From Ophelia neglecta (taxonomy: Eukaryota): a DNA stretch of 64,000 nucleotides. A program made the translations under genes and the position numbers. Below are positions 24,696 to 61,000 of the stretch, one piece after another. Below the pieces are notes generated by a model. It was given only the letters and a program-made list of their open reading frames with translations. It made no database searches and was not told the origin of the DNA. The stretch's first letter is position 1. The number at the start of each line of letters is the position of its first letter. The stretch covers positions 73,718,001-73,782,000 of the forward strand of contig OZ260666.1 in the NCBI GenBank assembly GCA_965285935.1, written 5' to 3'.

Positions 24696-26394
24696 CCAAT
24701 TACTCCAAAATTATGTAAACAAATAATTGCCCCTTTGGCTCCCATCCTTGCACGAATTTTTAATACAATGTTGACTTCAGGAATATTTCCAGAGAGCATG
24801 AAAATTGCAAAGATAATACCAGTGTATAAGAAGGAAGATCCCAGACAGTTTACTAATTATCGGCCTATTGCCATTCTTCCTGCTTTGTCAAAGATATTTG
24901 AAAAGATACTATATAATAGACTATACAATTTTTTTACTTCTAATAACATATTATATCCATCACAATACGGGTTTAGGATGAATCATTCCACTGAATACGC
25001 TACACACGAACTCGTTGACCACATAGCACAAAATTTAGACTCAAAAAGCAATGTAGGCGCAATATTCATCGACCTTACAAAAGCGTTCGATACCCTTAAA
25101 CATTCTATTTTGTTAAGAAAATTGTTCAATTACGGTGTGCGTGGCCTGCCTCTCACTCTACTTCAGAGCTACCTCACAAATAGGATGCAATATGTTCACT
25201 ACAATAATCATACATCATCTTCTAGTCCGATAAATTGTGGAGTCCCACAAGGGTCAATTCTGGGACCACTCTTCTTTATCATTTTTATAAATGATGTTAT
25301 AAACTGTCTTGATGAATCGATTGCAATTCTGTTCGCTGACGATACCAGCCTTGTTATTCAAAAACCCAATTTCCGTAGCCTTATACACACGATGAATCTT
25401 GAGCAGGATAAAATAAACAAATGGATGACAGCAAATAGTCTTATACTTAATATAAATAAAACCAAATATATTATATTTCAGAACCCTAACAGGAAATGCA
25501 CTGATGTAATGTTAAATGCTCTCTCCATAAATGGGACACAGATCGAACAGGTTCATGCATACAAATTCCTTGGCACCATCATTGATGAGCGCTTAAACTG
25601 GAGAGATAATATAACTCATAAATGCAATAAGGTATCTAAAATAATCGGTATATTAAATAGAATAAAAAACATCCTGCCTATTGATATACTTAAGGTAATC
25701 TACACATCTCTTATCTTACCGCACTTTCATCATGGTGTAACAGCCTGGTATAACCCTAACAACATGTCTTCTACGACTAGGTTGTTCAAACTGCAGAAAA
25801 AAGCTGTCAGAGTAATAACTAGATCTCATTACATCGCACACACTGACCCCATATTTAAGACATATAAGCTACTTAAGCTTCATGATATTTTCATACTTAA
25901 ATGTTTAAAAATCTATTTTGCTATCGTAAACAAATGTTGCCCAAGCTTTACTCTAAATTGTGTATCTTTAAAAGCTAGCAGCGTTCAGCCTTATAATACC
26001 AGAACCTTAGATGTAATTATCAGGAAAAACGCAAGAACGAATTATGGGAAACAATGCCTTTGGTTTAAGCTCCTGTTTTCAACAAATGAAATTTTGTATA
26101 AATTTAGGAAATCTTTATCAGGAAATACAGACTATAAATCAATCTTTCTCAGTGAATGCCAGACCACTTGCCATATACAGAATTGTTATGCATGTAATGC
26201 CTAGAACCTTTTATACTGCAATGGTAACAACTATTCAAACATTAATGTACCCATTACTTACAGCTCCACTATGAAAACTTTGTAACAAATCTATATAATA
26301 TCTTGATGTAAATCTCCATGCTTGACCGGGCGGCCAGTGCTTACAGCTTCGGCCATAGCTGGCGTCCGTAATAAAACGAATTCAATCAATCAAT
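24696..26394 (+). mobile_element. 5'-truncated non-LTR retrotransposon (CR1/L2 group, Crack/Daphne-like)
   Basis: RT reading frame open from ~24696 to 26204. The 3' UTR has a GC-rich stem-loop-like segment (~26326-26369), AATAAA at 26370-26375 and a (TCAA)n tail at 26381-26394. No endonuclease domain or ORF1. Confidence 0.92.
24735..26204 (+). CDS. LINE ORF2 fragment: reverse transcriptase plus C-terminal region (489 aa, no native start codon)
   Basis: RT motifs YRPIAILPALSKIFEK, QYGFR, FIDLTKAFD, GVPQGSILGPLFF, LFADD, KFLG; C-terminal CQTTCHIQNCYAC. Confidence 0.9.
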   Translation: MAPILARIFNTMLTSGIFPESMKIAKIIPVYKKEDPRQFTNYRPIAILPALSKIFEKILYNRLYNFFTSNNILYPSQYGFRMNHSTEYATHELVDHIAQNLDSKSNVGAIFIDLTKAFDTLKHSILLRKLFNYGVRGLPLTLLQSYLTNRMQYVHYNNHTSSSSPINCGVPQGSILGPLFFIIFINDVINCLDESIAILFADDTSLVIQKPNFRSLIHTMNLEQDKINKWMTANSLILNINKTKYIIFQNPNRKCTDVMLNALSINGTQIEQVHAYKFLGTIIDERLNWRDNITHKCNKVSKIIGILNRIKNILPIDILKVIYTSLILPHFHHGVTAWYNPNNMSSTTRLFKLQKKAVRVITRSHYIAHTDPIFKTYKLLKLHDIFILKCLKIYFAIVNKCCPSFTLNCVSLKASSVQPYNTRTLDVIIRKNARTNYGKQCLWFKLLFSTNEILYKFRKSLSGNTDYKSIFLSECQTTCHIQNCYACNA

Positions 26395-43663: not shown

Positions 43664-44543
43664 TCTACCATCATACTTGATACACGTCCAACACAGCATA
43701 CAGAATACCGCAAGGTATTTCTACTCGTCCTTCACGGCATGCCGAATTACACAAGGTATTTTTACACGTCCAACACGGCATGCCGAATACCACAAGGTAT
43801 TTTTACACGTCCTACGCAGGATGCCGAATACATCAAGGTATTTCTACTCGTCCTTCACGCCATGCCGAATACCACAAGGTATTTTTACACGTCCAACACA
43901 GCATGCCGAATACAACAAGGTATTTCTACACGGCCAACACAGCATGCCGAATACCGCAATGTATTTCTACAGGTCCTTCACAACATGCCGAATACCGTTA
44001 GGTATTTCTAAATGCCCAACACAGCATGCCGAATTTCACAAGATATTTCAACACGGCCAACACAGCATGCCGAATACCGTAAGGTATTTCTGCACGGCCA
44101 ACACATCATGCCGAAAACTGTTTGGTATTTCTACACGGCCACCTCGGCATGCCGAAAACCGTTAGGTATTTCTACACGTCCAACACAGCATGCCGAAAAC
44201 TGTTTGATATTTCTACACGGCCAACACAGCATGCCGAAAACCGTTAGGTATTTCTACACGTCCATCCCAGCATGCCGAAAACCGCATGGTATTTCTACAC
44301 GGCCATCACAGCATGCCGAATACCGTTAGGTATTTCTACACGTCCATCACATCATGCCGAAAACCGCATGGTATTTCTACACGTCCAACTCGGCATGCCG
44401 AATACCACAAGATATTTCTACACGTCCAACACAGCATGCCGAAAACCGTTAGGTATTTCTACACGTCCATCACAGCATGCCGAAAACCGCATGGTATTTC
44501 TACACGGCAAACACAGCATGCCGAAAACAGTTAGATATTTCCA
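43664..44543. repeat. 41-bp minisatellite (CATGCCGAATACCACAAGGTATTTCTACACGTCCAACACAG), ~21 units
   Basis: CATGCCGAA recurs every 41 nt (e.g. 43738, 43779); generates overlapping periodic ORFs in all three + frames. Confidence 0.96.
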
Positions 44544-45545: not shown

Positions 45546-46018
45546 TCACGTCGCGTTGTATTGTGGGATAGTAGAGAACATAGCAACCAGAGAGCCTATA
45601 CTGGAAAACAGAAATAGCCAGAAGAATATTTTGTCCACACATTTTGCCAAGGTACGCCATTCCAATTCGCGTCTGTCCATATGCTCGAGGTCAAGAGCGG
45701 AAGGTTGTTTAGAAACATTACTTCTCCTCATGGAGTTATTACACACATTGTTACGATGTGACGTCAACCCTTCAATTTCACTTAGAATGGAAAGGTTATC
45801 CAGTTCTATTTCCGGTAATTTGACCTCGTTCACGTGGTTCTCTGCCATGGTGACCTTGTTAGTCAACGAGTCGCGTCTGGACCTCGTTTTGAGACAGAGT
45901 CTGCGCAGGCAGGTAGGAACTCTATGGCCAGAGTCTTTTCGCAGGAATATATTGGTAACAATCACTGCCATTACTAAGGCTATAGATACCATGATCATAG
46001 TCAATCCAAACAGCATAC
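45546..46018 (-). CDS. nAChR-like gene, exon 8 (M3, intracellular loop, M4, stop)
   Basis: TTTGTTCCAG|GT ATG; M3 MLFGLTMIMVSIALVMAVIVTNI; MA/M4 EWRTLAKCVDKIFFWLFLF; TGA at 45546-45548. Confidence 0.95.
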
Positions 46019-49000
46019 CTGGAACAAAGATGGGAATATATCTGAATATTAAATATCAGGGTGACACTCAACACGTTACCAAAGCAGTATAACATGGCAA
46101 CTATCTTGATAGATAGACATATACCGAGAATTCGTGTTTTGGATTGAATAATAGTTATAAAATTTTCGTAACCAAGAGAGTTGTCATAATATTGATCACA
46201 CCGGAAATGTATGTTTCACATTCCTTAAGTATACACGTAGTTATCAAGATTTCGTTACATTTAGTGAGTTGGCTGAAGTTGCAGCATATTCTCTCTTACA
46301 TTTGTAATTCATATGAACTTTTTAAATTCAGCCTTATCCTGCTCTACTTTCTTTTTATATAGCTCAATCACACGTTCCTTTTTGGTAGCGTTTAGTTTTT
46401 TATTTCAAAGAGATGACTCTCTTTTACAATCGTCAGTGCTAGAATTTGCATTCCAACTGTATCCGATTATTGTTATGACTACGTACCTAGAGCGGGAATA
46501 GCATCAGGGGTGGGCGGTAAGGTCTCTCCCACTATCAACAGAAATACTACTAGCGCCAGTAGTATTGTAATCTCCAAATTCACCTTCTCGCCGCTCTCTA
46601 CCGGAAGAAAAAAGCCTAGGAAAGACACGGCGTAGATCAGTAGGCAAGGAAAAATAAGGTTAATGATGTAAAACAGGGAGCGGCGTGTCATGTGAATAGT
46701 GAAGGTCACATCCGGGTAGGGTTCAGGGCAGCAGGCGTATATCTTCTCGTGTCTCTCAACCGTCACCTGCAATACAAAGAGTAAAAGTAAGAGACTGGAG
46801 ATGAAATGGCATATGCCGAATGTCTGGCAAGGCTAGGGATCGGGTTAGCTCATCTCTTCACAGTTGCTACCAATGTAAATTATATAAGATAAAGGTCAAC
46901 ATCGTTTAGCACTGTACCTGTTCGACATAATAGTGTTTTAGAAATGAAGTATAATGTGCTGTATACAAGTTGTCACTTTCCCGCTACTACTTGGCTTTAG
47001 GGATGTAGTAAAGAAGTTTGAAAGCATAGTAGTTTAGATAGCATAAACGATAAGTAGTATATGCCTTTTAATTCGCTCTTTTCGTAACTGACTAAGCCAA
47101 TTGTAATACATCTTAAGAATATGTGACCCGTTGTGGTGTAATTAATACGTTTGGAAGCATAGTAGATTACATGACATGAATGTTAAGTAGCAAAATATAA
47201 GGTTCCTGGTCTACATACCACGCCAGGTTTTCAGGAGGGTAGCATATGGCTAGATGGTCGTTCTCGTTGTTACCTACATTTACATTATGTGTATAAAGCA
47301 AGCATTCTATTTGTTATGTTATTAAGTATTATGTAAGGTACCTGGTCCACATACCACTCCTGATTTTTTGGAGTGTAGTATATGGCTTGATGTTCGCTTT
47401 CGTTGTATGTGACGTTCAATTTAAGTCCATTGAAGGTCCAACTAATAAAGACGATGTTGCATTTCTGTCGATCGAATGGGAAGTGCCGAACGTCCAGCGT
47501 GCAATATGTCTTCACCACGGCCGGGAACATCCACAGCACCTGGAGAAAAGTAAAATACTCCAAGTGACAATAGTGGAAAGGGGAATTATATGAGATGATA
47601 CGAGAAAAGTGCGTTAAATCGGTCAGGAACTATCGGCAACCAGCAGCCACAGTCCCACACACATCTACAACCAACGTCGCGCATCCAAACAGCAAACAAA
47701 CTTGCACTGCAATTTATAATTAATAAAAACACCAACTTGATATAACTTGCAATGAGAAGCAATCACCAGTTTTCTACAATCCGGGTCAGAACACAAAACC
47801 AAAAGGTCAGAGGTCAAAGAAGGATAGAGTTGAAGATTATTCATAATATATGGTTAAAAAAAAATAACATTGCCGCCATGCCATTTCGAAAGCCACAACA
47901 GCCAATGTTTGTATCTAGATGGCATGAATCAAAATATGTTTTGGAAATATGCTATTGTTAGTTATTGCATTTATATATCTTTCCCGACCTTATTAACTTA
48001 TGAAGGATGATGTAGAAAGGATATGGCCTCTAAGGCCAAATGTAGCTGGTTGTAGTATGCCCGAATGTAAATAATGCTCTCTTCAGACGACTTATTCAGG
48101 AAAGATATATCTTTTAGTCGCAAGACCAAGTTGGTTTTATCAAAACTAAGAACAATTTTTGCTTTGCATAGATCTTAATAATTTTATATTTCTTAATGGA
48201 TATTAGAAATTTGCTTTTCCTTCAGTCTTGTGTGCTTGACAGAATATAACAAAAAGCCGTATCTAACAAGACAGTATATACGATCACTATAGACTGTTGG
48301 AAATATGATTTCCTTCCTGCCTATCTATATGTATCTTGATATTTGTATGGCCTACCTGTCCGTTGGACGAGATGATGGCAAAGGTGTCCATAAAGTCCTT
48401 AAAACTATCGTCGGCACTGGAAAGGAACAAAGGAAGGGAAATACAATATATGACTATGTCTAAAGCCATAAACAAACATTTGTATACTCTGTGATGTTCA
48501 CATCAGTTTTGAAAAGCATAGTCGCTTGTCTTATTTTGTGCGTTTTGGTGTAAAAAAGAAAATTGACTTTGTTTCAGGCTTTTTGGACTTTTTTAGTGTG
48601 TGCCATTTCATTTTAGAGTCACTTTTTTTTGGCTGAAAATAAAGTAGTTTTAGACCTTGCGGTCACAAAGTTGTCCAGATTTCATTTAAATTCTGGATAT
48701 AAGTACCTTGTGGTGTTTGCGTAATTTCGATAAAAGGTTTGCTTGCGTTTATTTCAAGTTATGTCATTTCATTTGCGTAAAAAGCGTATATTCAACCTCA
48801 AAATCACGATGACATAGAATATTGATTTTATTGATTTGATGTGGCCTGTGTTTGCTTAAGTCTTGTCAATTGCCATCTAAGTCATCTTATGCTTATGTAC
48901 CCCAGTTAGGTCATACAGTTCGAGGCGATGCTCCTTGGCCTGTTTCATTGCCACTCCGGTTCAGTCTGTGACAAGAGGTGATCCAATCAACTAAGGTGGC

Positions 49001-52000
49001 CTTGCAGACATCACAGCTCGTGGAAGCAGTGCAATGCGCTCCTCCACACTTCTGCAGTTTTATATTTTTTCCATCCCAGGATAATGTACATGATTTTGGG
49101 TTCCCCTCTAAACGTTTCATGAGTTGCAAGTTGTAAGCTCTAAGCTGGATGTGAAAAGTTTTCCCTGCTGAAGGCAAAATCTGACACCTTCTCGTGACTA
49201 GCTTTCTTTACTGCAGTGAGAATGACAACTGTTAAGAATGGCAAGTGTAAGGTCTGGAATCTCAAATTGTTACTTCACAATAACCTTTTGGTTTATATAG
49301 AACATATAGTCCCTATCCCAATTTGGCGGCATAGTCAAACGTACGCGTAACCTTAGCTGATCCTCATTCCTATCTACCATATCACAAAGCTCATTAAGCA
49401 TCGCATTGTACTAAACATATTTAGGAGATCCTCTGCTGCACGAATTTGCATTAGCTGATGGTTCAGGACATAAATAAGGTTGTGATATACAGAATCGTTC
49501 TCTTACTTTATGGCAAAATTTAGCTTTTCCTACACGTCTGCCATCTCTGCATGAATCTGCGTTGCAAAGTTACTTACTTGGGTTGATTGTGGCAGCTAAG
49601 CTTTCAGAGAACTATACCTCTGCATAATCATGTTGTGTGTTGGCAGTCGATCTGATCAGATTCAATCTCATTCATTGACCCAACCAGTCAGGGACATTTT
49701 TCCACACCAGAGCGCACAAAATATGAACAAGAGAGCATGACATTGAAAATAAAATGAGCATTATTTGTGAATTACAACTAACCTCCTGCCGTTTCCAACG
49801 TTAAAAACAGATGGTTTATCAACGTAGTTCGGACAGTAAGTGATGCAGCCAGCAATACGCCTTTGACAACGTGTTGTATATATAGTGCAACACACGAAAT
49901 GGGTATCATTCCGATAACATTGTTAATGAACGAGAATATTCCATTTAAGTTGCAAGAATCACCAGGATTAGCTGGTTGCTATTATGTAAATAACCAGCAA
50001 CGCAACAACCCTAGTGCGATCGTCGCTAAGCAGGTGAGGGCTATTTATAAAACTAGTAATTTTACCAGTATTTTGTTATTTTGAAAGAACTACCGTTTTA
50101 AGGTTTTGACCGCTATGGTCATAAATAGTATAGAAACAAAGATGATTGTGATGATTGTGATTGTCTTACAAATTGTTGATGAAGATGTCTGGGGTCCAGA
50201 CGAGTAGGGCCGGGATCCAGATCTTATCCACACCCCCGTACTCCTTCTCATCCCACGTCAAGTACTCGTCCATCCACCGCTAGACGGAGACACACAGAAA
50301 GACAATTGATCATTAAACAGGTACACATTTCAGTAGGAAGTCTAGACATATAATTTCATTCCTTCAGATCGTGCACGAAAACATGTTCCTTTACGATTGC
50401 AGTTCTCGAACGTTTGCGTATTTAAGCTTAGCATTGAGATACTTATTTGGATAAAACATAATTCATTGCAGAGGGGTAGTTACATTTTATACTTAAGGCA
50501 GAGGGGACAAATCTGAGCCTAAGTAAGGGAATCGTTTTGGGCACGAGTAATTATCACTTAACTTTGTATTTGTGCCTTTGGAGGGCCTTTTTATGCAGCT
50601 AATAACAATTCGTATAGAATCATACAAAACATTCCTCGGTGACCGAATAAGCAAGAGGCGTGCCACACTTGAGGTTTTTGTAGATTTCCCAAAGGGAGAT
50701 TTTTCCGCTGCTTAAACTTGGTTGGCTTCCATCTATCTCTTCAGCACCGTGTGAGGCAATGTGTAATTCACCAGGCAATGAGGCCAAAACGTGGAGAGAC
50801 AAGAAAAGATGCTCGGCAAAATTACCTGGTTAACCGTAAATTCAATTGCCAAAAGCATTCTCATAATGCATTTGTGGTTGGAATCACTTCGCTAGCAAGC
50901 ATAAATACCGCCATTATTCTCTTACTAAAAGACACATTTGTCCATTCCTAGATTGCTGTGCTTAAACTAGTTCAGCAAAAATTGCTGGTTTCATTTCTTC
51001 TGTAAATCCCATTCTCATCTACAAAGCCTGATTGCGAACGGCCATTGTGACCTTATTGTAAAACACATTGATCAACGAAAGGCTTTTTTTCTAAGGCGAT
51101 TACTCGATTACCCAAAAATCCATCGGCACAATAGCTCGAGTTTAATCAAAACATTCTGTCCTTATCAATAAGCTTGAATTGTTATTTAAATAATGAGAGA
51201 GGTTTTCTCCAGAAAACACGCACAATCGAATTAGGTGTCTCGAGGGCATATGTATCATCTGTTTAGAAGCCACGACTAACTTGAACAGACAGGTAGAGGA
51301 TAGTCGTTACTTCTCATGCGTGATGAACAAAATTAGCCAGATTTTACACTTAAACAGGCACCATGAATCACGGAAACTGGTTCAATCTTAAGGCTTTGTG
51401 TTAACGGAGAAACCCAAGCTTCGGCGAAAGCCGCATGGCCTTTTAAATTGAGCAAATATGAATTAAATAATAACCCTACCCTAACCCTTTTATATCAAAA
51501 ACAAAATGGACTTGTCTGGCTAAGGGTTGGGTTATAAAATAACTGATATTTTAGATTATTGTGTCACCAATGCTGCTTTCGCAACAGCTCCCGCTTTCGC
51601 CGTTAATACAAAGCCGGGGCTAATTGTAAAACACGGATAAGGATGTCCAGTCCGCTGGCTGGAAGGTTTCCCCCTTTCCCCCGTACTACTGTTTCTAACA
51701 GTGGCCCCAACCCATGAGTCCAAGGGACATGAAACACTAGTGTTTTAGGTCCGCCTGGGTGTCGTATCCCTAGAATAGCAGGACTGTGGTTTGGAAATCC
51801 TGGTTGATAACGTCTCCCTGTCGCAATACATTGGTTTTCTAACGTCCATGGGGCCTTTATTCCTAGGGTTATGAGTCTGAGGGACCATTCAGCCAGGGGA
51901 CCAATTAATCTTATACACCAGCAGTCAATGCAAGGTCGTTCATTAAGATTACTAAATACAACTGGTTCGAAATCCTCGGGAACACTCAACTGCAGGCCCA

Positions 52001-55000
52001 CAAACATCAATCCCCAGTGTTCGGTTTCTGAAATCCCCACCACCCCTCCCAACCAAACCTCCACCCGACCCTACAGGATTATAGTGCTTAATCAATCTTA
52101 ACTTGCTAATCGGGGTTTCTGACAGCTGGATTTGGTCTTAAACCTGGTCATTGTGGCCTTAAATCTAATTCTGGTCAACGGAAAACCGATCAACGCGGCC
52201 TCACCTAAACGGTAATAGGCCAATCTAATCCCTGTACTTAAGCTCGCTTCCATAGATCGGTTCCACTTCTCTCAGTTAATTGCTTCTTTTATTGCCCGGA
52301 TGTTAAATGTTCATTATGTGAAATAATATTTAAAGGTTCTTACCAGCCTGACAGCTATGAGGGCGGACAAAGTTTGCATCTTTTCGTTCTGAAAACACAG
52401 AAGCAAATTAAAGTTGTTACTATGGGACAACGAACGTGTTGACCATTTCAACATTCAATATCCTCAACTGGATGCGACTATTCCATTTTAGACGGACAGT
52501 TGTGGTGAAAGAGGTTAAGTTATATATGTTTGTTTGTTTTATTGCATAAAGGATAAGGCCATAGGCCCTCGACCTTACAGTGGAGTCGAAAAATTGCACA
52601 CAGTCACTGTGCATATTCACAATAATAGCAGTAACATGGCCACCAGTAAACATACTATATAAAGAACTTAAATTACTCTGGACAGAAGTCTACAAACAAT
52701 GGATTATAGTTGTAAGTAAATACTACATTAGATGTTGACAGATTTCGCAACCCAATTTATGAATTCTTTGGGCACTACAGGGTCTCAAAAGAAGTCCATT
52801 TGTGATTAAGGAGTGGCCTCAGTTCCCATACGGAAGCAGTTTGTAGGTAAATTATGTATCTAAACATTACTAGTAAATTTGGGATTGGACTTTGAAATAA
52901 ACGAAAAAAAAAGTGAGTGGACCCATCGAAATCAAAACAAAATCGGTAATCAAGAAATTCCATAAATTTTGGAAATATGCATCAAAAAACACTCATTAGG
53001 AGCCCCACATAATTCCACCCGATGATGAAACACACTCGGAGAGTCTATGATGTAATTATCCATCAAATAAACCTGAGCATGTAGCTGGGAAAATCACCTG
53101 CCTAATTATAATGGAACCATAGGGGTTTAATGGGCTCTTATGAAACATGTATGAGTTTGGTCTGATATGACCCCATCGCCTAAAGGCGTCTGAAATTTAT
53201 CAGTGTGGAAATATAATATCGGAGGTAAAACAAGCGTTCTGGGCCTGAAATCTATACCCATGCGGTAAAATGGTCTTGTTGCCAGACGTACAAATTTGTC
53301 ACGCTTAGAACGCCTGTTATACCTTCGGTAATATCGTAGCTCATACGAGTTATACAACCCCGTGGTACCCCCAATGACTGGCACTATTTGCTTGATAAAC
53401 AATACTGACCGTGTCCAGTATATGATAGAGTGACATTCCTATGTAAACTGTTGTTTCTGTGCTGTCATTGCGGACGGGCCGGATGTTTTTCTCATAATGT
53501 AAGAGTATTTTCTGTTTAATTCTGTATTCGTATGAGTATCCCTCCATGTTTTTCGCAGGACTCATGCCACATCCGGGTCGCTTGACCATTTTCCTACGGC
53601 CGCCTTTTGAAGATGATCTGGAGGTCCCTCTGAGAGATCTGGATGGGAAGTCAGCTTGCATCATGTCCATCCCAATATCCTCTTCCTCCTCATCTTCCTC
53701 ATCCGGGTAGTTATCCTCGTATTCCTCCGCGTTTTCTAACTTTATGTGGTCTCTATCACCATCAGGCACACGAAATAGTCCCCTCTCAATATTGTTCACA
53801 TCGTCGGTTTTATACCTATCATTTTTATGACGAGTCTTTGTAGATGGCGCATGCGCAAGAGGCCTATATGCTGTACTGCCGTCGATATCTGGCCCACGGT
53901 CTCCTTTGAGGTGTTTTACTGTATGGTCACTGGGTGGCGCCACCTGTTTAAAAGATTTACTAGATGTCACCGTATTACTGATATGGAGATCCTCTGATTC
54001 AGTGATGTCATCGTTTTGGGGCGGCACTTCCGATGTTTGCGAGTCTCGGTAACCGGGCCTTTCTACGCGCATGTCTTCAGGTGCAGTTGTAGTAGTAGTC
54101 GTTGATAGTGTAGTGGATCCTCCGCCATCTGTACAGTGCAGGAGAACTGGAAGAAAGAAATATAAGAACTTATCTCAATTGTCACCACGAAACAGACAGC
54201 AAACCTCACTGTCCAATGCCATTTGATAAAGTTGAAAGTGACGTGTAAGTCCTTGCAATATTGCGATAATCTCGAACGTTTTTTGACAAATCATTAACAA
54301 CCAGAAGAAAAACTGGAATAAATTTAAGAAAATGAATAAAATGGCGTAGCAACTTGCCACAATGATATCATGAGTTTTTAAATCATAACAGAGAAAAAGA
54401 CAGTAAAACATACAAGTTGTGGGACCATTGTCCTAGACTGATAAAAATATAATTGGCAATTTCCAATTTTAATTCTATTCCAATTTTCAGCAAATTTGAC
54501 AAGTGCTGTCTTGAAAGCAACTTATTAAACATGATAGCAGCAGGCACGAACGCTCAGCGGTGAATCAGTTCTTCTAAACCTTTTCTCCTCGTGCAAATAC
54601 CTTGGTTTACAGTGTTTTTGTTGTCACAAACGGTCATCAGTCTCCCTAAGAAATATTCGGACCCTTCGTAATACCAATAGATATTCAAACACGAAACCAA
54701 TTGCCTGATATTTATTATTTTGTCTTGACCCCGGTGTGATCAATTCTTCTATCAGACATTCCCATCTTTGTTCGAGTTAAGATTGATTGCTGACAGTCTT
54801 GCCGGATTCAGAGGTTTGGGGTGAAAGGTGCCAGGACCTCCACGTTTGTTTTTCAATGGATAATGCTAGTCGTAGATATTGTTTGATGGGTGTCTCCTAG
54901 ATTGGGTCAGCGGATATAGACAAATCCTCACCTCATGGAGATGACATTAGGACAGTCATCATACAAACTAGTCCAGCTACCTTAAGGACTGTGTAGGAAG

Positions 55001-57977
55001 AAAACCAAGTCCTGACTTCTGTGACCCCCACCCAACCATCAGTTACTAGTGTCACCCTGACTACAACCACCAAAACCCCGTTGCCATTCTTCCGGATGGA
55101 AGGGTCTGGGAGGGGGTCACTTCCCCTCATACCCTCCACATTGAAACCCTATACGATTTTTAAGATCAAGCCTAGATCTGCCAGTAGGCGGGGCTCGCAT
55201 ATATCTCAGGTGGCCTCGATTAAATAGGAAATAAAAAAGGCAAAACACGTGCGAAATAATGATTTAACGACATAAGGTCAGGTTAAACGACACCAGGCTC
55301 ACTAGACCGGAGTAAATTTAAGTTCAAATAATTGGTAAATTGGTCAGAATGGACAAGTTGGTTTTTGAACGCTCTGTGATAAGCCAGTTATATTACTTTT
55401 CGTCTGGGGGCAAATAAATGTAAACGAGAGTTATCATATTCGGCAATGAGCCAACCTGTTTTAACTCTTTTAAAAAGTATTTAAAAAACGAGTGGAAGAG
55501 CCGAGCGAACATTTGTGAATCATGACTAGTATGCGATTTTTTTATTTCTCCGATAACAAACTACGGTCGACAAATCACATTGCAAAACGCTCTTATGACA
55601 AATGACGGTCGACCAATCACAGGACAAAACAGGTCGATAAAAAACGACGGCCGACCAATCACAGGACAAAGCCATTCGATTGCGAAGGACGGTTAACAAT
55701 AGAAAATAAAAATCGTGTTTTCAGTCTTAACATGGTTTTGCCCTTTAACTATAAATAATCACAAAAGAAGCTTTGAGGTTTTCACTTTACCTTTTTGCCT
55801 GAGGCCCAAGGACAATTGGGACATTTAGACTAAATGTACGCATCATGGAATTTATACAAATGGGCAGCCGCTGATTTGACCCCACTGACATATAGTGTTA
55901 AAAACTAATTCAACTGCGAGATCTGGGTACTATATTCATATATCTGTGAATTAAACAAAAACGTCTGTAAGCGGATGAATCGATAAACAACTTGATGACA
56001 TTTAGAACCAAGTGAAAAAGAACAAGAAATACCATTCTTCACAGAGTGGCACCGTCTTTCTCCAGGGCCCTGACTGTCATTGCTTAAAGCCTATGTTTGT
56101 TTGCCAAGTGTCCATTGATGTTTTGTTCTTATCGAGTCACCGTCCTTCGAGGTCTAATCTAACCTCAGCCCCACCCCGCCGACAAAACAAATAAAAGCAA
56201 ATAGAAAACCAGAGAGTCAAATGTCGACTTGAGATTGAGCGATCACACCCGCATACCAATCAGCCCCCGGCTGACTCACAGCCGGGAAGTCAGACCGCTG
56301 TTCAGCTGGCCGGCAGCTCCAGTATCCCACTGCAGTGTTCTGGAAACTTAGAATCAAAGAGGCAGGGTAAAGTCTGGGTATTTTGCGCATCGTTTAGTAG
56401 CATAAGAAGAAAGTCGCCTTATTTCGTTTAGTAAGTATACTACTCTGTGCATAAGTTGCGCGAAAAAGCCTATTTTTTTGGGCGGAATTGTCTTATGGAA
56501 AGGCTGAAGAGGGCAAATGTGAGATGTATTTGTACAGATAAGATTTTAATACGGCCACGAAATAAGCAGCTCCAGGGTGAGGGGAGAGTGAGGGGAGAGA
56601 GAGAGAGAGAGAAATAAATAGAATTGTTAATACTTTAACATAAGTTATGTAACTTATTATATCATAGATGGATGTAGGGTAGGATGGAGGAGATAGGCAG
56701 GAAGTTTAGGGGTCGATGTGGGAGTAGAAACTGTCCCCTCCCAGCCTCCCCTTTAAGGCACATTGATCGTTGTCTATTGTTTCCGGACCCGCCCTTCGAT
56801 ACCACTCGTATTGTGAGTCACTGACCGGGCGATATGCCTTTGGTTAATTGGCACCAGGACCTGACAGGTCAGCCACCCTCGTCTCTCACTGTCAGAATCA
56901 CCCAAGAACTGTGGATGGGCAAGTCTGTGGTATTATCTCAGCCCGGCGGCACAACTGAACATTGCGTGGAATCGGCGGGTTAAGCGATATCAATTACCGG
57001 CTACAGCCGTGTAGTCAGCTTTGGGGAGACTATACGGGTATTAGATGACCTCTTATTGTTCCATCCGTATCATAAAACTAGATCACTGACCAACGCATGT
57101 TACCCTAGTGTGTCTGCCCCTCAAACAGCTGTGTCATCATCACTTTGTCACTGGCCCATTTGCCGCTGACATCATCGAATTATCTATTGTCAGGATTCTT
57201 GGTAGAGAGGTACGTGTAAGATCCGTGGCCGGGGGAGGGGATAGTGTGCGCTCAGGCGTTTTGAGATACCTCATTGTCGAAAGGAAACTAGTAAACTAGC
57301 CACAAAGTTAAGTTTCTTCAAACCGCTTTGGACGAAATGACATCCCATCAACAACTTGGTTCCACGCATTGACTGCCACTGCTGCTTTCTGACTGACCTC
57401 CCCAACCCCCCCCCCTATCACGCCCCATCGCAATATTTAATTTTTGATAATGCATGCCGGTATTCGTGCAACAGCATCGTAATGTCATTAAATAACGTTT
57501 CACAAAATAGCCATGGGCAACACATTCATGTTATTTACTCGATAACAAATAAACAAAGAAAGTTATTTCTGGTGGTTTCTCTGGATGCTACCGTATTGGT
57601 GATGTTTATGATGAATATAATACCAAGGGTTTCCTCTAAAGTAACATTTGCAAAGTTCTATTAAAAAATGGATGGAAACTTCCTACGAATAAATGCAATT
57701 CAAAGCCTTATTAATTGTATGAGTTGCATGCATATGCCACTTTGCAAATCATAATACACTTAACGATCAGGGGATCCATTGACCACCCTAACATTGAAAT
57801 ATTTAATATTCATATGTGAATTATTTTGTTTTCGTTTGAAGGATAAAAAGTATGTCTCACTACATGATGGCTGAAAGTTTGTCTTATCAAGTGTTTAACA
57901 ATTTCAGATATGTTAGTAAACATTTGAACATTACCTTGTCCAAATGCCATAAGCCATAATGTTTTCTTAAGAGACAT
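45546..57977 (-). CDS. Cys-loop ligand-gated ion channel, nicotinic acetylcholine receptor alpha-type subunit (alpha7/alpha9-like), 8 coding exons, 648 aa: join of complement(57935..57977, 53410..54146, 52344..52388, 50170..50279, 48356..48416, 47342..47539, 46487..46766, 45546..46018)
   Basis: Exons assembled by hand; all introns GT..AG with matching phases (1,0,0,2,0,0,1); total 1947 nt = 648 aa + TGA. Motifs: helix EYRIKQKILLHYEKNIRPV, WMDEYLTW, WTPDIFINN, Cys-loop C-x13-C (CTLDVRHFPFDRQKC), SWTF, loop C YACCPEPY, M1-M4 with PVESGEKV and AKCVDKIFFWLF. Confidence 0.95.
46487..46766 (-). CDS. nAChR-like gene, exon 7 (loop C, M1, M2)
   Basis: GTATTGCAG|GTG...CTA G|GTACGT; encodes YACCPEPYPDVTF, RRSLFYIINLIFPC and PVESGEKVNLEITILLALVVFLLIVGE. 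Confidence 0.96.
47342..47539 (-). CDS. nAChR-like gene, exon 6 (Cys-loop, loop B)
   Basis: TTTTCTCCAG|GTG CTG TGG...GAC CAG|GTACCT; encodes VLWMFPAVVKTYCTLDVRHFPFDRQKCNIVFISWTF...EWYVDQ. Confidence 0.95.
48356..48416 (-). CDS. nAChR-like gene, exon 5 (61 nt, (F)ADDSFKDFMDTFAIISSNGQ)
   Basis: TTCCTTTCCAG|T GCC...CAG|GTAGGC; its phase-2 start completes TT|T (Phe) from exon 4. Confidence 0.92.
50170..50279 (-). CDS. nAChR-like gene, exon 4 (110 nt, RWMDEYLTWDEKEYGGVDKIWIPALLVWTPDIFINN)
   Basis: CTCCGTCTAG|CGG...AAT TT|GTAAGA; the 110-nt exon typical of nAChR genes, with WxD and WxPD motifs. Confidence 0.95.
52073..52264 (-). mobile_element. MITE family A copy in nAChR intron 3 (left end missing)
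   Basis: TCTTAACTTGCTAATCGGGGTTTCTG...GCTGGATTTGGTCTTAAACC...GGTAATAGGCCAATCTAATCCC is the reverse complement of the 22075 copy. Confidence 0.75.
52344..52388 (-). CDS. nAChR-like gene, exon 3 (45 nt, NEKMQTLSALIAVRL)
   Basis: TGTTTTCAG|AAC...CTG|GTAAGA; the 45-nt exon typical of nAChR genes, aligning to DEKNQVLTTNIWLQM. Too short for the ORF track. Confidence 0.93.
53410..54146 (-). CDS. nAChR-like gene, exon 2 (737 nt: end of signal peptide, long N-terminal extension, N-terminal helix)
   Basis: Acceptor TTTCTTTCTTCCAG|TT; open frame shared with ORF 53350..54072; ends ...SLYHILDT ACG|GTCAGT. Confidence 0.92.
55562..55700. repeat. ~41-bp tandem repeat (3-4 units, GACGGTCGACCAATCACAGGACAAA) inside a probable Kolobok-like element ending CCCTTTAA (55748)
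   Basis: Direct repeats near 55563, 55603 and 55646, with a TTAA-type terminus downstream. Confidence 0.55.
57935..57977 (-). CDS. nAChR-like gene, coding exon 1 (signal peptide MSLKKTLWLMAFGQ)
   Basis: ATG preceded in frame by TGA TAA TAT. Ends CAA G|GTAATG (phase 1), matching the phase-1 start of exon 2 and giving the signal peptide MSLKKTLWLMAFGQVLLHCTDG. Confidence 0.75.
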
Positions 57978-58024
57978 ATATTATCAAGTAACTCTTTTGA
58001 TCCAGTATTCTATTTGATACCGAA

Positions 58025-58091
58025 TGCTACACGACGCTACAAGATGCTTCATGATACTACACGATGCAACATGATACTACACGTACGATGC
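58025..58091. repeat. 10-bp tandem repeat (TGCTACACGA-like, ~6 units) just upstream of the nAChR start codon
   Basis: tgctacacga cgctacaaga tgcttcatga tactacacga tgcaacatga tactacacg. Confidence 0.7.
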
Positions 58092-61000
58092 CCTTTTGGA
58101 TTAACTGCACATCCGATCCCTTTCAACCTTCATGATGAATGTCTAGTGTGAAGATTGAAACCTGTTTTCCTATTTAAAATTGAAAGCAGTGACAGGGAAT
58201 ACTCTATTTTCCTTAACTTGGATGCGCAGACACATTATTAGTCTTTGATTCCCACTTTTTAATTGCACAGTGACATAGTACTTCTTCTTGTTCGAGGATG
58301 GCTGTGCAATGTATATGAAATTGTTCGATCTTAGAAAAGTAAGACTTTTTTTTCGTACCACTTACTAGTAATTTTGATTGCAGTATTAGCATAATGAACG
58401 AGTGTTTTAAGCCGTATTACTGTATGTTAAATAAGACGTCTCGTATGGTATTTACGAGAAGGACGGTCTGATATTCTGAGCATGTTAACTTGCATGTGTG
58501 TGATAAGGTCCTCTGTGTTTGTATTCATCATGGCTTTTTTATTTCTTTCAATGCATTGATCATGTTTGGGATACATCATTGTGATTTGTGTAAAAATGAT
58601 GAGTTGTATGAATTAAAGTTATTATGTCCCTCCCAACTATCATCATTTGTGACACTGAAGCTGATTAGTGGTGATTTCTTGTGTGCTGGAAAGAGCTTTT
58701 AAAGAATAAGTTTTCAGTCACTTTTGAGAGCTTAGTATGCAAATCAGAAATGGCATATCCCCTTCTCTAAAGTCTCAGATGACGAAATGATTTAACTCAA
58801 ATGCCTTATTTTAACCAAATAGAAATATCCTTATCAATAATTTATAATGCATCCTGCAGTTCTTTGACGGGCGTTGATATACACTAAATGTTATGACTAT
58901 AAAGCATTCCATTTTCCGATACAAAATACTTAAATAAAAGACTAAAAAAAGGTGGTAAAGATAGAAAATGAGATCAGTTTTCACTGGGGATTCAAGTGTT
59001 GGAATCGGGCGCAATAAAATCCAGAAGATTGATAAAGTTGCCGAAGCATTTTAGTCGAATCGCTGTAAAATGTGGCAAGAAGAATGATACATTGGGGAAC
59101 ATTTTGGTAAGAGTTGGTGAAATGGACGCCTAAAGGGCCAGTGATAGCGCAAACCAACTATCATCACACCAATAAACAAAAGCCAATCTCCTAGCTGGTG
59201 AAACCCCTTAACTGGAGCTAAAGATACACAATTTATTCCCTTATCAACAACACAAAATGTGGACAATTGGTATCCCCGTTAGACAGAGTGTCAAAATCAA
59301 TGGTGAGAAATCATGATAAACTATGTCTCACAGTTTAGACAGGCACTACTAGTCACATTTATTCAACTTTTCGGGGCTTACCAAATTGATATTTCGGACA
59401 ACTTGCATTAAGACCTTATAGCAAGACGGGGTGTTGATCTAGATGGATGGTCCTTTCAAGCAGGTCTTTCATTTATTGGTTTACAACCTCCAGCTTCATA
59501 GCTCTATCCTGATATGACGCCTCCAACGACTTGTACATGAAACGACGTTTTTGAGATCACAGATTTTACCTTTTAGGAGCACTTTCATCAGGCCAATAAG
59601 TCTTAGAACGCCACGTTAACTTAACATGAATAGCGCCTCGACCTTTTTATAGACACGCTATAAATGGATTATGTGAACTGTTTAAAGCTTTTGGTGTTTT
59701 TTTTACCTATCTCTAAAAAAATTAATCTTATTTTACCCTTGCGTGGGTCGCTTCTTCGTAATATCCCTTGAGTTCGGTAAAAATAGCGATTCGGATTGAC
59801 AAATTTTAATAAAATGATTAAGAATCGATGTAATGGAATTGCGTTGCCATGATTTTAAAGGCCTGCGGACAGTCTACCCTAAGTAAGGTCGTAGAACTCA
59901 TGGACACCCAGTGCTACAACTAAAAGTAGGTAAACCTTAAAACATACGACTCGGTGTTAAAGGAGTATTTACCCACAAGGACGGAATGACCCAGCTATGT
60001 AATAATTATTCAACGATATTACCTACATTTTTACGTTAAATTTACTAGCATGGCATACAATATAATTTAATATTTGCATATCAATTTTAGTCAACATCAC
60101 TTTGGAACACAAAGGTATGAATTGAAACTAGATATATAGTTAATATTATAGTATTGCTAAAATAACATTTAAATTGTAGAAGGAATAAATGCCAAAATAG
60201 TTAGTTAGTACCAAAACTAACCAACGATAATTGCATGTGCATGCCGTATTAAGTAACGAAATAGGTAACAACACAGATTATTGCTGAAAGATATATACAT
60301 GATATATATAATATATTCAAATACGAGTTAATGTGCCCCAAATTCAGTAGGAGAACTTGAAAAATGTGCAAGAGTGCCAACACGCGGTCGATGCCCATGT
60401 TTATTCCTTTATATTTTTTGCAAAATTATTACCTTTCGACTAAAGGACAAAGATTCCTTTCGTCTGAAAGACAAAGATTCCTTTCTCGGACGTACAATTC
60501 TAGGATTTAGTCCCCTACGGAAACAGCCCTCTACAGTTATGCAGCAAGAGAACTTGCAGTCTCTTTCACCACCATCTTAAAGTCGTAACATAGTCTTAAG
60601 ACCTAAGATAATTTATTGGAAAAAGCCGACCCTGGTGAGGGTTTGGTTTCCGGTTCCGGAATTCGATATGCCACAGACATTACTGTCTGTAGCAGTAGGC
60701 CCATAAACATCCTTAAAACGTTAGAAATATGCGCTCTTCGCAAAACACCCGTGTCCTGAATGGTGCCCCAGAGACCTAGATAAAACAACCACTGCGCAGG
60801 ATGAATGGGCGATAACAGTTCAAACGGAAATGCCGCCTGCGTCCCTCGAGTCTCATAAAGGCCAATTATCGCTCATGAAACGCTCCAATTTCTTGAGTTA
60901 AATGGAAGGCTAACCCACTCCAGTATCCTCGTGTTACCAGAAAATTTTCGTAAACAGGAAATGTTCCAAAATAACTATACGATTGCGAATTTCACTTTAA

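What the first reader, a model, noticed from the sequence alone, without database searches (positions are those of the whole stretch)
53530..54125. nAChR-like subunit with a ~200-residue pro-domain-like N-terminal extension
Seen: between the signal peptide (~residue 22) and the conserved helix EYRIKQKILLHYEKNIRPV (~residue 221) lie ~200 extra residues in one exon. They include a Thr/Ser mucin-like run (STTLSTTTTTT), an acidic tract with Tyr in a sulfation-like context (EEYEDNYPDEEDEEEED), a basic cluster (RSLRGTSRSSSKGGRRKMVKR) and one unpaired Cys (PGCG). Established: canonical nAChR subunits begin the helix a few residues after signal cleavage; RxxR and RR/KR are proprotein convertase motifs; G-RR is the peptide amidation signal. 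Inference: this may be a protease-processed pro-receptor that sheds an acidic propeptide, or one carrying a tethered or disulfide-linked regulatory segment. Either would be a poorly described regulatory mode for Cys-loop channels.
Basis: partly seen in the sequence, partly recalled or inferred. Interest (0 to 1): 0.75.

Follow-up and report, generated by a model that had tools for sequence, protein, structure and literature searches.

The report
Disordered charged tail on worm nicotinic receptor
A nicotinic-receptor-like channel gene of a probable annelid worm really does encode about 200 extra, floppy, strongly charged residues in front of its ligand-binding domain; related worm genes share the layout, but the proposed protease-cleavage sites are not conserved, so it looks like a tethered tail rather than a shed propeptide.

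Summary
On the minus strand, a 737-nt exon (54146-53410) is open throughout. It encodes about 200 residues between a signal-peptide end and the first helix of an alpha-type, alpha7/9/10-like nicotinic-receptor gene whose later exons run down to 45549. A 274-codon open frame is not expected by chance (4.6e-8). The extension has no Pfam domain and AlphaFold2 models it as disordered. Its nearest relative, an unnamed contig ORF, is 54% identical over 228 aligned positions.

Many relatives share the layout: a Tyr-rich acidic block, then a short [ML][MQ]x[DE][FY] motif, then a clustered Lys/Arg block just before the helix. The only named relative with the long extension is from the annelid Paralvinella.

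The named cleavage sites, the Gly-Arg-Arg signal and the lone Cys are all lost in the nearest relative. Convertase motifs are no commoner than in shuffles within this subgroup (R-x-[KR]-R in 1 of 15, 1.3 expected). A sister subgroup does keep R-x-K-R (10 of 46 in the wider set, 1.45 expected).

My best reading is a tethered, charge-patterned, probably Tyr-sulfated extracellular tail. No RNA data exist for this organism, so the splice junctions and the first exon are unverified. I rate it a new variant of a known kind, of moderate interest.

The parts
57935..57977 (-). Candidate exon 1: start codon, 14 codons plus 1 nt, signal-peptide-like. This is a prediction only.
Evidence: One search shows an ATG at 57977, a phase-1 donor AAG|GTAATG and a hydrophobic core. 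There is no RNA or homology support.
53410..54146 (-). Exon 2, 737 nt: the end of the signal peptide, about 200 residues of extension, then the first LBD helix and beta1.
   Evidence: Searches give the splice signals and the open frame. One search shows it is not chance. Searches show conservation. One search shows DNA contigs agree.
54085..54117 (-). Thr/Ser run (residues 10-20 of the exon-2 translation). It is mucin-like and not shown to be conserved.
   Evidence: The nearest relative's ORF starts downstream of it. Other relatives have different Pro/Thr/Ser-rich repeats.
53737..54084 (-). Variable, low-complexity middle of the extension (residues 21-136).
   Evidence: It aligns collinearly only with P0001. 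pLDDT is 42-50 with no secondary structure.
53665..53736 (-). Acidic, Tyr-containing block (residues 137-160).
   Evidence: Net charge is -11 in residues 141-155. An acidic tract occurs in 20 of 46 relatives. Tyr is enriched inside such tracts, 15.8% against 3.1%.
53647..53664 (-). Short conserved motif of pattern [ML][MQ]x[DE][FY] (residues 161-166).
   Evidence: It is present in 15 of the 71 sequences that have a helix anchor, and in 13 of the 46 with a long pre-helix part. It is aligned in A1.
53578..53640 (-). Basic Lys/Arg cluster (residues 169-189).
   Evidence: Net charge is +6 in residues 171-185. Lys/Arg clustering is 103 against a shuffle mean of 81.3, with 0 of 2000 shuffles reaching it. 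A basic cluster occurs in 36 of 46 relatives. Convertase motifs are not enriched and are lost in P0001.
53530..53577 (-). Linker to the helix (residues 190-205), with the single Cys at 53569-53571.
   Evidence: The Cys is replaced by Gly in P0001.
53410..53529 (-). First LBD helix and beta1 strand (residues 206-245). The exon ends in phase 0.
   Evidence: Pfam PF02931 covers residues 207-244. AlphaFold2 gives a helix at 205-215 with pLDDT about 90. All 25 relatives aligned end at the same exon boundary.
52326..52391 (-). Exon 3 (loop D region). These are tblastn match limits, not splice sites.
50178..50279 (-). Exon 4 (tblastn match limits).
48353..48415 (-). Exon 5 (tblastn match limits).
47330..47539 (-). 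Exon 6, with the Cys-loop (two Cys 13 residues apart).
46485..46778 (-). Exon 7: loop C with the vicinal Cys pair, then M1 and M2.
45549..46034 (-). Last exon: M3, the intracellular loop and M4, up to the stop.

Best explanation
Exon 2 is a genuine coding exon of an alpha-type, alpha7/9/10-like nicotinic-receptor-family gene in a probable annelid. It adds an extracellular, intrinsically disordered tail of about 200 residues between the signal peptide and the first helix of the ligand-binding domain.

The last third of the tail is a conserved charge-patterned module. A Tyr-rich polyacidic block comes first, then a short [ML][MQ]x[DE][FY] motif, then a dense Lys/Arg cluster that abuts the helix.

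I infer that the tail stays attached to the mature subunit at the top of the extracellular domain and works electrostatically. The basic cluster is the older element of the clade. It would bind polyanions, either sulfated matrix glycans or the receptor's own acidic block. The acidic block, with Tyr in the classic sulfation context, would act as a counter-charge or as a capture site for basic partners. In that way the tail would tune surface localisation, clustering or access to the vestibule, rather than form the agonist site.

Shown here: the coding status, the disorder, the layout and its conservation. Inferred: the topology, the sulfation, the absence of cleavage and the function.
For: Coding status:
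- The open frame has probability 4.6e-8 by chance.
- The acceptor is strong, with a 0.90 pyrimidine tract, and there is a GT donor.
- P0001 is 54% identical over 228 aligned positions with 14 gap positions.
- 78 library proteins match at E<=1e-3 and 19 at E<=1e-10, many across residues 100-245.
- All 25 relatives aligned stop being similar exactly at the same exon end.
- Several relatives (P0004, P0016, P0005, P0028) start the same ORF with a hydrophobic, signal-peptide-like stretch, judged by eye.
- A Paralvinella gene model joins the extension to the LBD.

Disorder:
- No Pfam hit before residue 207 at E<=1.
- pLDDT is 42-53 and there is no secondary structure over residues 1-200.
- Mean hydropathy is 0.357, below the charge-hydropathy boundary of 0.433, and the fraction of charged residues is 0.33.

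Layout:
- A basic cluster occurs in 36 of 46 sequences and an acidic tract in 20 of 46. The acidic block lies N-terminal of the basic one in 18 of 19 that have both.
- Lys/Arg clustering exceeds all 2000 shuffles.
- Tyr makes up 15.8% of non-acidic residues inside acidic tracts and 3.1% outside. 14 of 19 tracts hold a Tyr.

Against cleavage as the conserved role:
- Convertase motifs are at shuffle level in the subgroup and are lost in P0001.
- The basic cluster follows the signal peptide directly in Tubulanus, Lineus and one Owenia protein.
Against: - No transcript evidence exists. No RNA run holds the exon, and the three runs laid are DNA contigs of one sample. The exon 1-2 junction, exon 1 itself and use of the exon in the main isoform are therefore unverified.
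- The window's own protein does contain an R-x-x-R and two [KR]R sites, so cleavage in this species is not excluded.
- A sister subgroup conserves R-x-K-R, which shows that processing is plausible somewhere in the family.
- No signal-peptide, sulfation or disorder predictor was available beyond AlphaFold2 and composition.
- The relatives are mostly unnamed contig ORFs of unknown species. They are related to one another, so the counts and p-values are nominal.
- Function is inferred entirely from composition.
Confidence: 0.5

Rival explanations
1. A proprotein convertase cuts in the basic cluster, the acidic N-terminal part is shed or stays non-covalently bound, and the receptor matures or is activated.
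For: - The window protein has one R-x-x-R and two [KR]R sites in the 39 residues between the motif and the helix.
- A sister subgroup keeps a positionally conserved R-x-K-R right after the acidic tract: 10 of 46 against 1.45 expected, with 0 of 2000 shuffles reaching 10.
- An acidic block in front of a basic block resembles anionic propieces that neutralise cationic mature parts (recalled, not tested).
Against: - None of the 13 long-pre-helix members of the window's subgroup has R-x-K-R.
- R-x-[KR]-R occurs in 1 of 15 (1.3 expected) and [KR]R in 10 of 15 (10.6 expected).
- Lys and Arg interchange freely, whereas convertases need Arg at P1 (established knowledge).
- Relatives with the basic cluster directly after the signal peptide have nothing to shed.
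- No paper on convertase processing of Cys-loop receptors was found (15 of 43 listed papers seen as titles and abstract starts).
Confidence: 0.2
2. The extension is isoform-specific or mostly skipped. The main transcript would use another first exon or an internal acceptor and produce a canonical short N-terminus.
For: - There is no RNA evidence either way.
- A paralogue 200 kb away has the canonical structure, with an acceptor 14 codons before the helix.
- An in-frame internal AG at 53627 has a 0.70 pyrimidine tract.
Against:
- 200 codons kept open and 54% identical to a relative imply translation in at least one important isoform.
- Relatives carry the signal peptide, extension and helix in one uninterrupted ORF.
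Confidence: 0.12
3. The extension is a tolerated, fast-evolving spacer with no specific role. Its low-complexity sequence would have expanded by slippage in front of the LBD.
For: - The N-terminal two thirds align only with the nearest relative.
- Relatives hold unrelated tandem repeats there (P0011 and P0028).
- Extension lengths vary widely, from 60 to 285 residues before the helix.
Against: - The order of acidic block, motif and basic block, the sequence motif itself and the Tyr enrichment are kept among relatives that are under 50% identical overall.
- The exon shows 3 substitutions and 0 indels, while the adjoining 705 nt of intron show 8 substitutions and 1 indel in run X2. These numbers are small and come from one individual.
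Confidence: 0.15

Closest known systems
Drosophila nAChR subunit Dalpha5
   Same: [quoted passage not shown] Long N-terminal extensions in this receptor class are therefore already on record.
   Different: That extension is described as lying upstream of the usual start, whereas here it lies between the signal peptide and the helix. No sequence comparison was made here. No charge-block module is described in the passage I read.
Human alpha7 nAChR (closest solved structure)
   Same: It is the best PDB match to the Paralvinella relative (E 1.8e-52). The Cys-loop, the vicinal Cys pair and the M1-M4 layout are shared.
   Different: The PDB alignment begins only after the first helix and beta1 (query 200-411), so nothing in alpha7 matched the extension. 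That mature alpha7 begins a few residues before the helix is established knowledge, not shown. The loop D Trp of alpha7 aligns with Ala in the Paralvinella relative, and the window has Ala at the matching place.
Alv-a1-pHCl / Alpo7 of Alvinella pompejana (Juneja et al. 2014, J Biol Chem)
   Same: It is an annelid Cys-loop channel. As I recall it, removing 37 residues in front of the N-terminal helix changed desensitisation and modulation. That would be a precedent for a pre-helix tail acting as an internal modulator.
   Different: It is an anion-selective, proton-gated channel from a different family branch, and its tail is far shorter. The paper is not held. I saw only its title in reference lists, so the details are recalled.
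Tyrosine-sulfated acidic N-terminal tails (chemokine receptors, PSGL-1, fibromodulin/osteoadherin)
   Same: These are extracellular acidic stretches rich in Tyr that bind basic surfaces, and the fibromodulin type mimics heparin (recalled). Here Tyr is enriched about five-fold inside the acidic tracts.
   Different: Sulfation was not tested here. Those proteins are not ion channels and do not carry an adjacent basic cluster in the same tail.
ENaC activation by furin
   Same: It is an ion channel matured by convertase cleavage that releases an inhibitory tract (recalled).
   Different: It belongs to an unrelated channel family. The defining conserved R-x-x-R sites are not conserved in the window's subgroup.

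Membership tests
Cys-loop / nicotinic receptor family (Pfam Neur_chan_LBD + Neur_chan_memb) | Ligand-binding domain profile match | tested here: met
   PF02931 matches the Cys-loop exon at E 2.8e-16, and the end of exon 2 at E 9.5e-4, which is below the cut-off on its own.
Cys-loop / nicotinic receptor family (Pfam Neur_chan_LBD + Neur_chan_memb) | Two Cys 13 residues apart (the Cys-loop) and a transmembrane region | tested here: met
   The Cys-loop was read in the open segment 47629-47288. PF02932 matches at E 9.5e-16 and 1.7e-9 on the last two exons.
Alpha-type nAChR subunit | Vicinal Cys pair in loop C | tested here: met
   The pair was read in the open segment 46832-46482.
Acetylcholine-gated nAChR (functional sense) | Complete aromatic box, including the loop D Trp | tested here: not met
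   The alpha7 loop D Trp aligns with Ala in the Paralvinella relative, and the window has Ala at the homologous place. Loop A was not checked here.
Convertase-processed proprotein | Conserved R-x-[KR]-R (or at least a dibasic site with Arg at P1) at the pro/mature junction | tested here: not met
   The window has no R-x-[KR]-R. The subgroup has it in 1 of 15 (1.3 expected) and [KR]R in 10 of 15 (10.6 expected). The sites are lost in P0001. A sister subgroup does meet this feature.
Convertase-processed proprotein | Demonstrated cleavage | not testable with these tools
   This needs protein work.
Tyr-sulfated acidic extracellular tail | Tyr flanked by Asp/Glu in a secretory-pathway-exposed segment | tested here: met
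   Two Tyr in the window's tract have at least 4 Asp/Glu within five residues either side. The family shows Tyr enrichment of 15.8% against 3.1%. Lumenal exposure is inferred from the position between the signal peptide and the LBD.
Tyr-sulfated acidic extracellular tail | Actual sulfate on Tyr | not testable with these tools
   This needs labelling or mass spectrometry.
Mucin-like domain | Extended Pro/Thr/Ser-rich repeats | tested here: inconclusive
   The window has only an 11-residue Thr/Ser run. Some relatives have longer Pro/Thr/Ser repeats (P0028). No conservation was shown.
Intrinsically disordered region | No stable fold predicted, with low hydropathy and high charge | tested here: met

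The most novel reading that the evidence does not exclude
The tail is a functional part of an orphan receptor. The agonist pocket is remodelled (loop D Trp is replaced). In this reading, the conserved short motif together with the sulfated acidic block acts in one of two ways. It could be a tethered ligand or auto-modulator that reaches the receptor's own extracellular domain. Alternatively, it could be one half of an electrostatic 'Velcro', in which the acidic block of one pentamer binds the basic cluster of the next. Receptors would then cluster themselves without an intracellular scaffold. In the sister subgroup with R-x-K-R, convertase cleavage would switch this off or on.
Probability: 0.1. 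Interest if true: 0.8.

Novelty: new variant of a known kind. Interest (0 to 1): 0.4.

Why it matters
Cys-loop receptors are usually pictured as starting at the first helix of the ligand-binding domain. Here a whole clade of spiralian alpha7/9/10-like subunits carries a conserved, disordered, charge-blocked tail at the mouth of the channel, and the acetylcholine pocket of these subunits is altered.

If the tail controls localisation, clustering, ion access or ligand capture, it would be a little-studied way of regulating this receptor class. It would also give a handle on orphan receptors from the large annelid expansion; at least 164 LBD exon matches occur in this genome.

There is a practical lesson too. 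Among the annotated relatives retrieved, only the Paralvinella model carries the long extension. Automated models may therefore be missing it.

Tried and rejected
RNA evidence:
- The look-up of sequencing runs listed 3 runs, none on record as RNA and all from one sample and study.
- Laid on 52200-58199, they are DNA contigs collinear with the introns. They give no junction evidence.

Naming the relatives' organisms:
- The listing of cluster members named only Paralvinella palmiformis and Macrostomum lignano.
- A second homologue search with exon 2 gave 12 proteins, none named.

Other searches on the extension:
- ESM Atlas gave a best score of 0.76, which is below the level of a lead.
- The own-genome search found the extension only once.
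- The PF02931 own-genome search listed later LBD exons only, so I could not count how many paralogues have long first coding exons.

Exon 1: the strict scan gave 4 poor candidates. The relaxed scan listed the best 18, and I kept only 57977-57935, as a prediction.

Ideas rejected:
- Disulfide tether through the Cys, because the Cys is not conserved.
- The amidation signal, because Gly-Arg-Arg is lost in P0001.
- The hydrophobic translation just upstream of the acceptor as a signal peptide, because it is the pyrimidine tract read as codons and is closed by a stop.
- Cardin-Weintraub XBBBXXBX: found in 4 of 15 against 0.92 expected. The four are close relatives and this was one of six patterns tried, so I do not rely on it.

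Literature:
- (titles and abstract starts of the listed papers) showed nothing on such an extension or on convertase processing of Cys-loop receptors.
- Jiao 2019 (PMC6896357): a term search found 0 occurrences of 'extension', 'signal peptide' and 'propeptide'.
- The Alpo4 paper (PMC10338036): only passages were read.
- Wijckmans 2016 (PMC4801368): only passages were read.
- Supplements are closed. Domain-combination tables or alignments there could mention N-terminal extensions.

Every search used single exons or natural database proteins. The second structure job and fold search were not used, because the extension has no fold to compare.
Full report
WHAT IS THERE. The finding lies on the minus strand. 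Reading 54222-53350 in that direction gives one long open frame. A 'cag' acceptor sits at 54149-54147, behind a tract that is 90% pyrimidine. A GT donor sits at 53409. The first two bases complete a codon begun upstream, and 245 full codons follow (54144-53410).

Pfam finds only the start of Neur_chan_LBD, at residues 207-244, and nothing else at E<=1. The rest of the gene was located exon by exon with a flatworm relative (P0066) and with Pfam. The match limits are:
- 52391-52326;
- 50279-50178;
- 48415-48353;
- 47539-47330, holding the Cys-loop;
- 46778-46485, holding the vicinal Cys pair of loop C, M1 and M2;
- 46034-45549, holding M3, the intracellular loop and M4.

It is therefore an alpha-type subunit gene. 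The closest solved structure to its Paralvinella relative is human alpha7 (E 1.8e-52).

With stops at 0.0598 per codon in this window, a 274-codon open segment has a chance probability of 4.6e-8.

IS IT TRANSLATED? Direct evidence is not available. No RNA run holds the exon. The three runs that do hold it are DNA contigs of a single sample, collinear with the flanking introns. They confirm the sequence. The exon carries three substitutions, two synonymous and one Pro-to-Leu, and no indel. In the same contig of run X2, the adjoining 705 nt of intron carry 8 substitutions and 1 indel.

The evidence for translation is comparative:
- A HMMER scan of 1.84 billion representative proteins with the exon translation gave 78 hits at E<=1e-3, 19 at E<=1e-10 and 1 at E<=1e-30.
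- The best hit, P0001, is 54% identical over 228 aligned positions with 14 gap positions. It runs from residue 25 to the exon end.
- Many other hits match from about residue 100-140 onward.
- In an alignment of the window with 25 relatives, every relative stops being similar at the same exon end and then reads on into unrelated sequence. They are genomic ORFs with the same donor position.
- Several (P0004, P0016, P0005, P0028) begin the same ORF with a hydrophobic stretch that looks like a signal peptide by eye.
- A GenBank model from the annelid Paralvinella palmiformis (KAK2168105.1, P0080) joins such an extension to the LBD, although it skips beta1.

In the window the signal peptide must lie in an upstream exon.

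Its pyrimidine tract scores 0.40. The best in-frame internal AG, at 53627, scores 0.70, against 0.90 for the real acceptor.

WHAT KIND OF SEQUENCE IT IS. AlphaFold2 was run with the 26-row alignment. It gives pLDDT 42-53 and no secondary structure for residues 1-200, then a confident helix at 205-215. The composition agrees: one third of the residues are charged, and mean hydropathy is 0.357 against a boundary of 0.433. The charge is segregated, at -11 in residues 141-155 and +6 in residues 171-185.

WHAT IS CONSERVED. There were 79 sequences in all, the window plus 78 hits. Eight had no recognisable helix anchor and 25 had fewer than 60 residues before it. That leaves 46. Among those 46:
- 36 have a basic cluster (at least 6 Lys/Arg in 12 residues);
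- 20 have an acidic tract (at least 10 Asp/Glu in 20 residues);
- where both occur, the acidic block is N-terminal in 18 of 19;
- 13 have a short motif of pattern [ML][MQ]x[DE][FY] between the two blocks.

Counting two ORFs that start at the motif, the subgroup has 15 members including the window. In these 15, the 26-42 residues between the motif and the helix hold 9-12 Lys/Arg and 0-4 Asp/Glu. The basic residues are more clustered than in any of 2000 shuffles (103 against a mean of 81.3).

Inside acidic tracts, Tyr makes up 15.8% of the non-acidic residues, against 3.1% elsewhere in the pre-helix region. 14 of 19 tracts contain a Tyr. The Fisher p-value of 2e-12 is nominal, because the sequences are related.

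The N-terminal two thirds of the extension align only with P0001. Other relatives carry unrelated repeats there.

THE CLEAVAGE HYPOTHESIS. In the 15-member subgroup the counts against shuffle expectation are:
- R-x-[KR]-R: 1 observed, 1.3 expected;
- [KR]R: 10 observed, 10.6 expected;
- R-x-x-R: 5 observed, 4.7 expected.

So charge is conserved but convertase recognition is not.

Annotated nemertean proteins (Tubulanus P0087, Lineus P0086) and one Owenia protein (P0091) have short N-termini, in which a basic cluster follows the signal peptide almost directly. There a cut would release next to nothing. The basic cluster therefore looks like an old part of the mature receptor.

Against this, 10 of the 46 sequences, none of them in the motif subgroup, carry R-x-K-R at the start of their basic cluster, usually as Ser-Arg-x-Lys-Arg. 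Shuffles give 1.45 on average, and none of 2000 reaches 10. Processing is thus a serious possibility for that sister subgroup, and it cannot be excluded for the window's protein, which still has dibasic sites.

CONTEXT.
- The closest named relatives are annelid. Paralvinella is 66.5% identical and Owenia 59.6% identical over the aligned exon pieces.
- Further relatives occur in nemerteans, a brachiopod, flatworms and an orthonectid, mostly annotated 'alpha-9/10-like'. Notes from other agents on this genome also call it an annelid.
- The genome holds a large Cys-loop expansion, with at least 164 LBD exon matches.
- The extension itself occurs once in the genome.
- A paralogue 200 kb away has the canonical structure, with an acceptor 14 codons before the helix.
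- A more distant nAChR-like gene on another chromosome (L003) has its own extension of about 130 residues, ending in an acidic Tyr-rich tract but with no basic cluster.
- The alpha7 loop D Trp aligns with Ala in the Paralvinella relative, and the window has Ala at the matching place. This agrees with the neighbouring first-stage note s1-733661.

HOW IT PROBABLY WORKS. The shown facts are that the exon is coding, the tail is disordered, and the module of acidic block, motif and basic block is conserved. The rest is inferred.

The tail should be extracellular, because it lies between a signal peptide and the LBD. It sits at the top of the extracellular domain, next to the first helix. The Tyr residues lie in the classic acidic context of tyrosylprotein sulfotransferase substrates (established knowledge; not tested here).

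I commit to a tethered, uncleaved polyampholyte tail. Its basic cluster binds polyanions, either sulfated matrix or the tail's own acidic block. Its acidic block acts as a counter-charge or capture site. The effect would be to tune localisation, clustering or vestibule access. My confidence is about 0.5 for the whole statement and about 0.85 for the part that says it is a real, conserved, disordered coding extension.

The rivals are convertase processing (0.2), an isoform-specific or skipped exon (0.12) and a tolerated spacer (0.15).

COMPARISON AND NOVELTY. Long N-terminal extensions in alpha7-like subunits are already on record. Drosophila Dalpha5 has about 300 extra residues (PMC3444433, passage read). 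As I recall, an Alvinella proton-gated chloride channel has a 37-residue pre-helix stretch that modulates it (Juneja 2014). That paper is not held and I saw only its title.

I found no description of the module of acidic block, motif and basic block, nor of convertase processing of any Cys-loop receptor. The searches were made, where I saw listings only, and term searches in Jiao 2019. Supplements were closed.

I file this as a new variant of a known kind. Interest is moderate (0.4).

LIMITS.
- No signal-peptide, cleavage-site or sulfation predictor was available.
- The relatives are mostly unnamed contig ORFs.

Noticed in passing
window 47170-47313 (minus strand): About 140 nt downstream of the Cys-loop exon's end, a second open stretch repeats the last 30 or so residues of that exon, plus the first residues read into the intron, in diverged form. 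It could be a local tandem duplication of the exon's 3' end, giving either a pseudo-exon or an alternative 3' end.
   Followed up: no
window 43681-44525: A tandem array with a 41-nt period, 20.6 copies and 83% matches lies just downstream of the receptor gene's last exon. It reads as repeated 40-residue open stretches on both strands.
   Followed up: partly
window 24735-26204 (+): This 489-residue ORF has the look of a non-LTR retrotransposon reverse transcriptase, judged by eye. It lies in a region of strong GC skew change. No Pfam scan was run.
   Followed up: no
L003 1012-1638 (G000 C8, about 42.61 Mb): Another nAChR-like first coding exon in the same genome has a 208-residue ORF. It holds a signal-peptide-like stretch, about 130 extra residues with several N-x-S/T sites, and an acidic Tyr-rich tract directly before the helix, but no basic cluster. 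Acidic Tyr-rich pre-helix tails may therefore recur in this genome's receptor expansion.
   Followed up: partly
L002 1463-1630 (G000 C9, about 73.565 Mb): This is a canonical paralogue 200 kb from the window's gene. Its exon starts 14 codons before the helix and carries only a few basic residues. A later LBD exon of the same paralogue appears at C9:73567877.
   Followed up: partly
window 52326-52391 (minus strand): In the loop D region, the position of the alpha7 Trp is Ala, both here and in the Paralvinella relative. This agrees with the separate first-stage note on a remodelled agonist pocket.
   Followed up: partly
window 54204-54480: Two contig versions of the intron just upstream of exon 2 differ at 16 positions and 1 gap in 276 nt (records 3 and 4). 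This probably reflects two haplotypes of one individual and is far more divergent than the exon.
   Followed up: no
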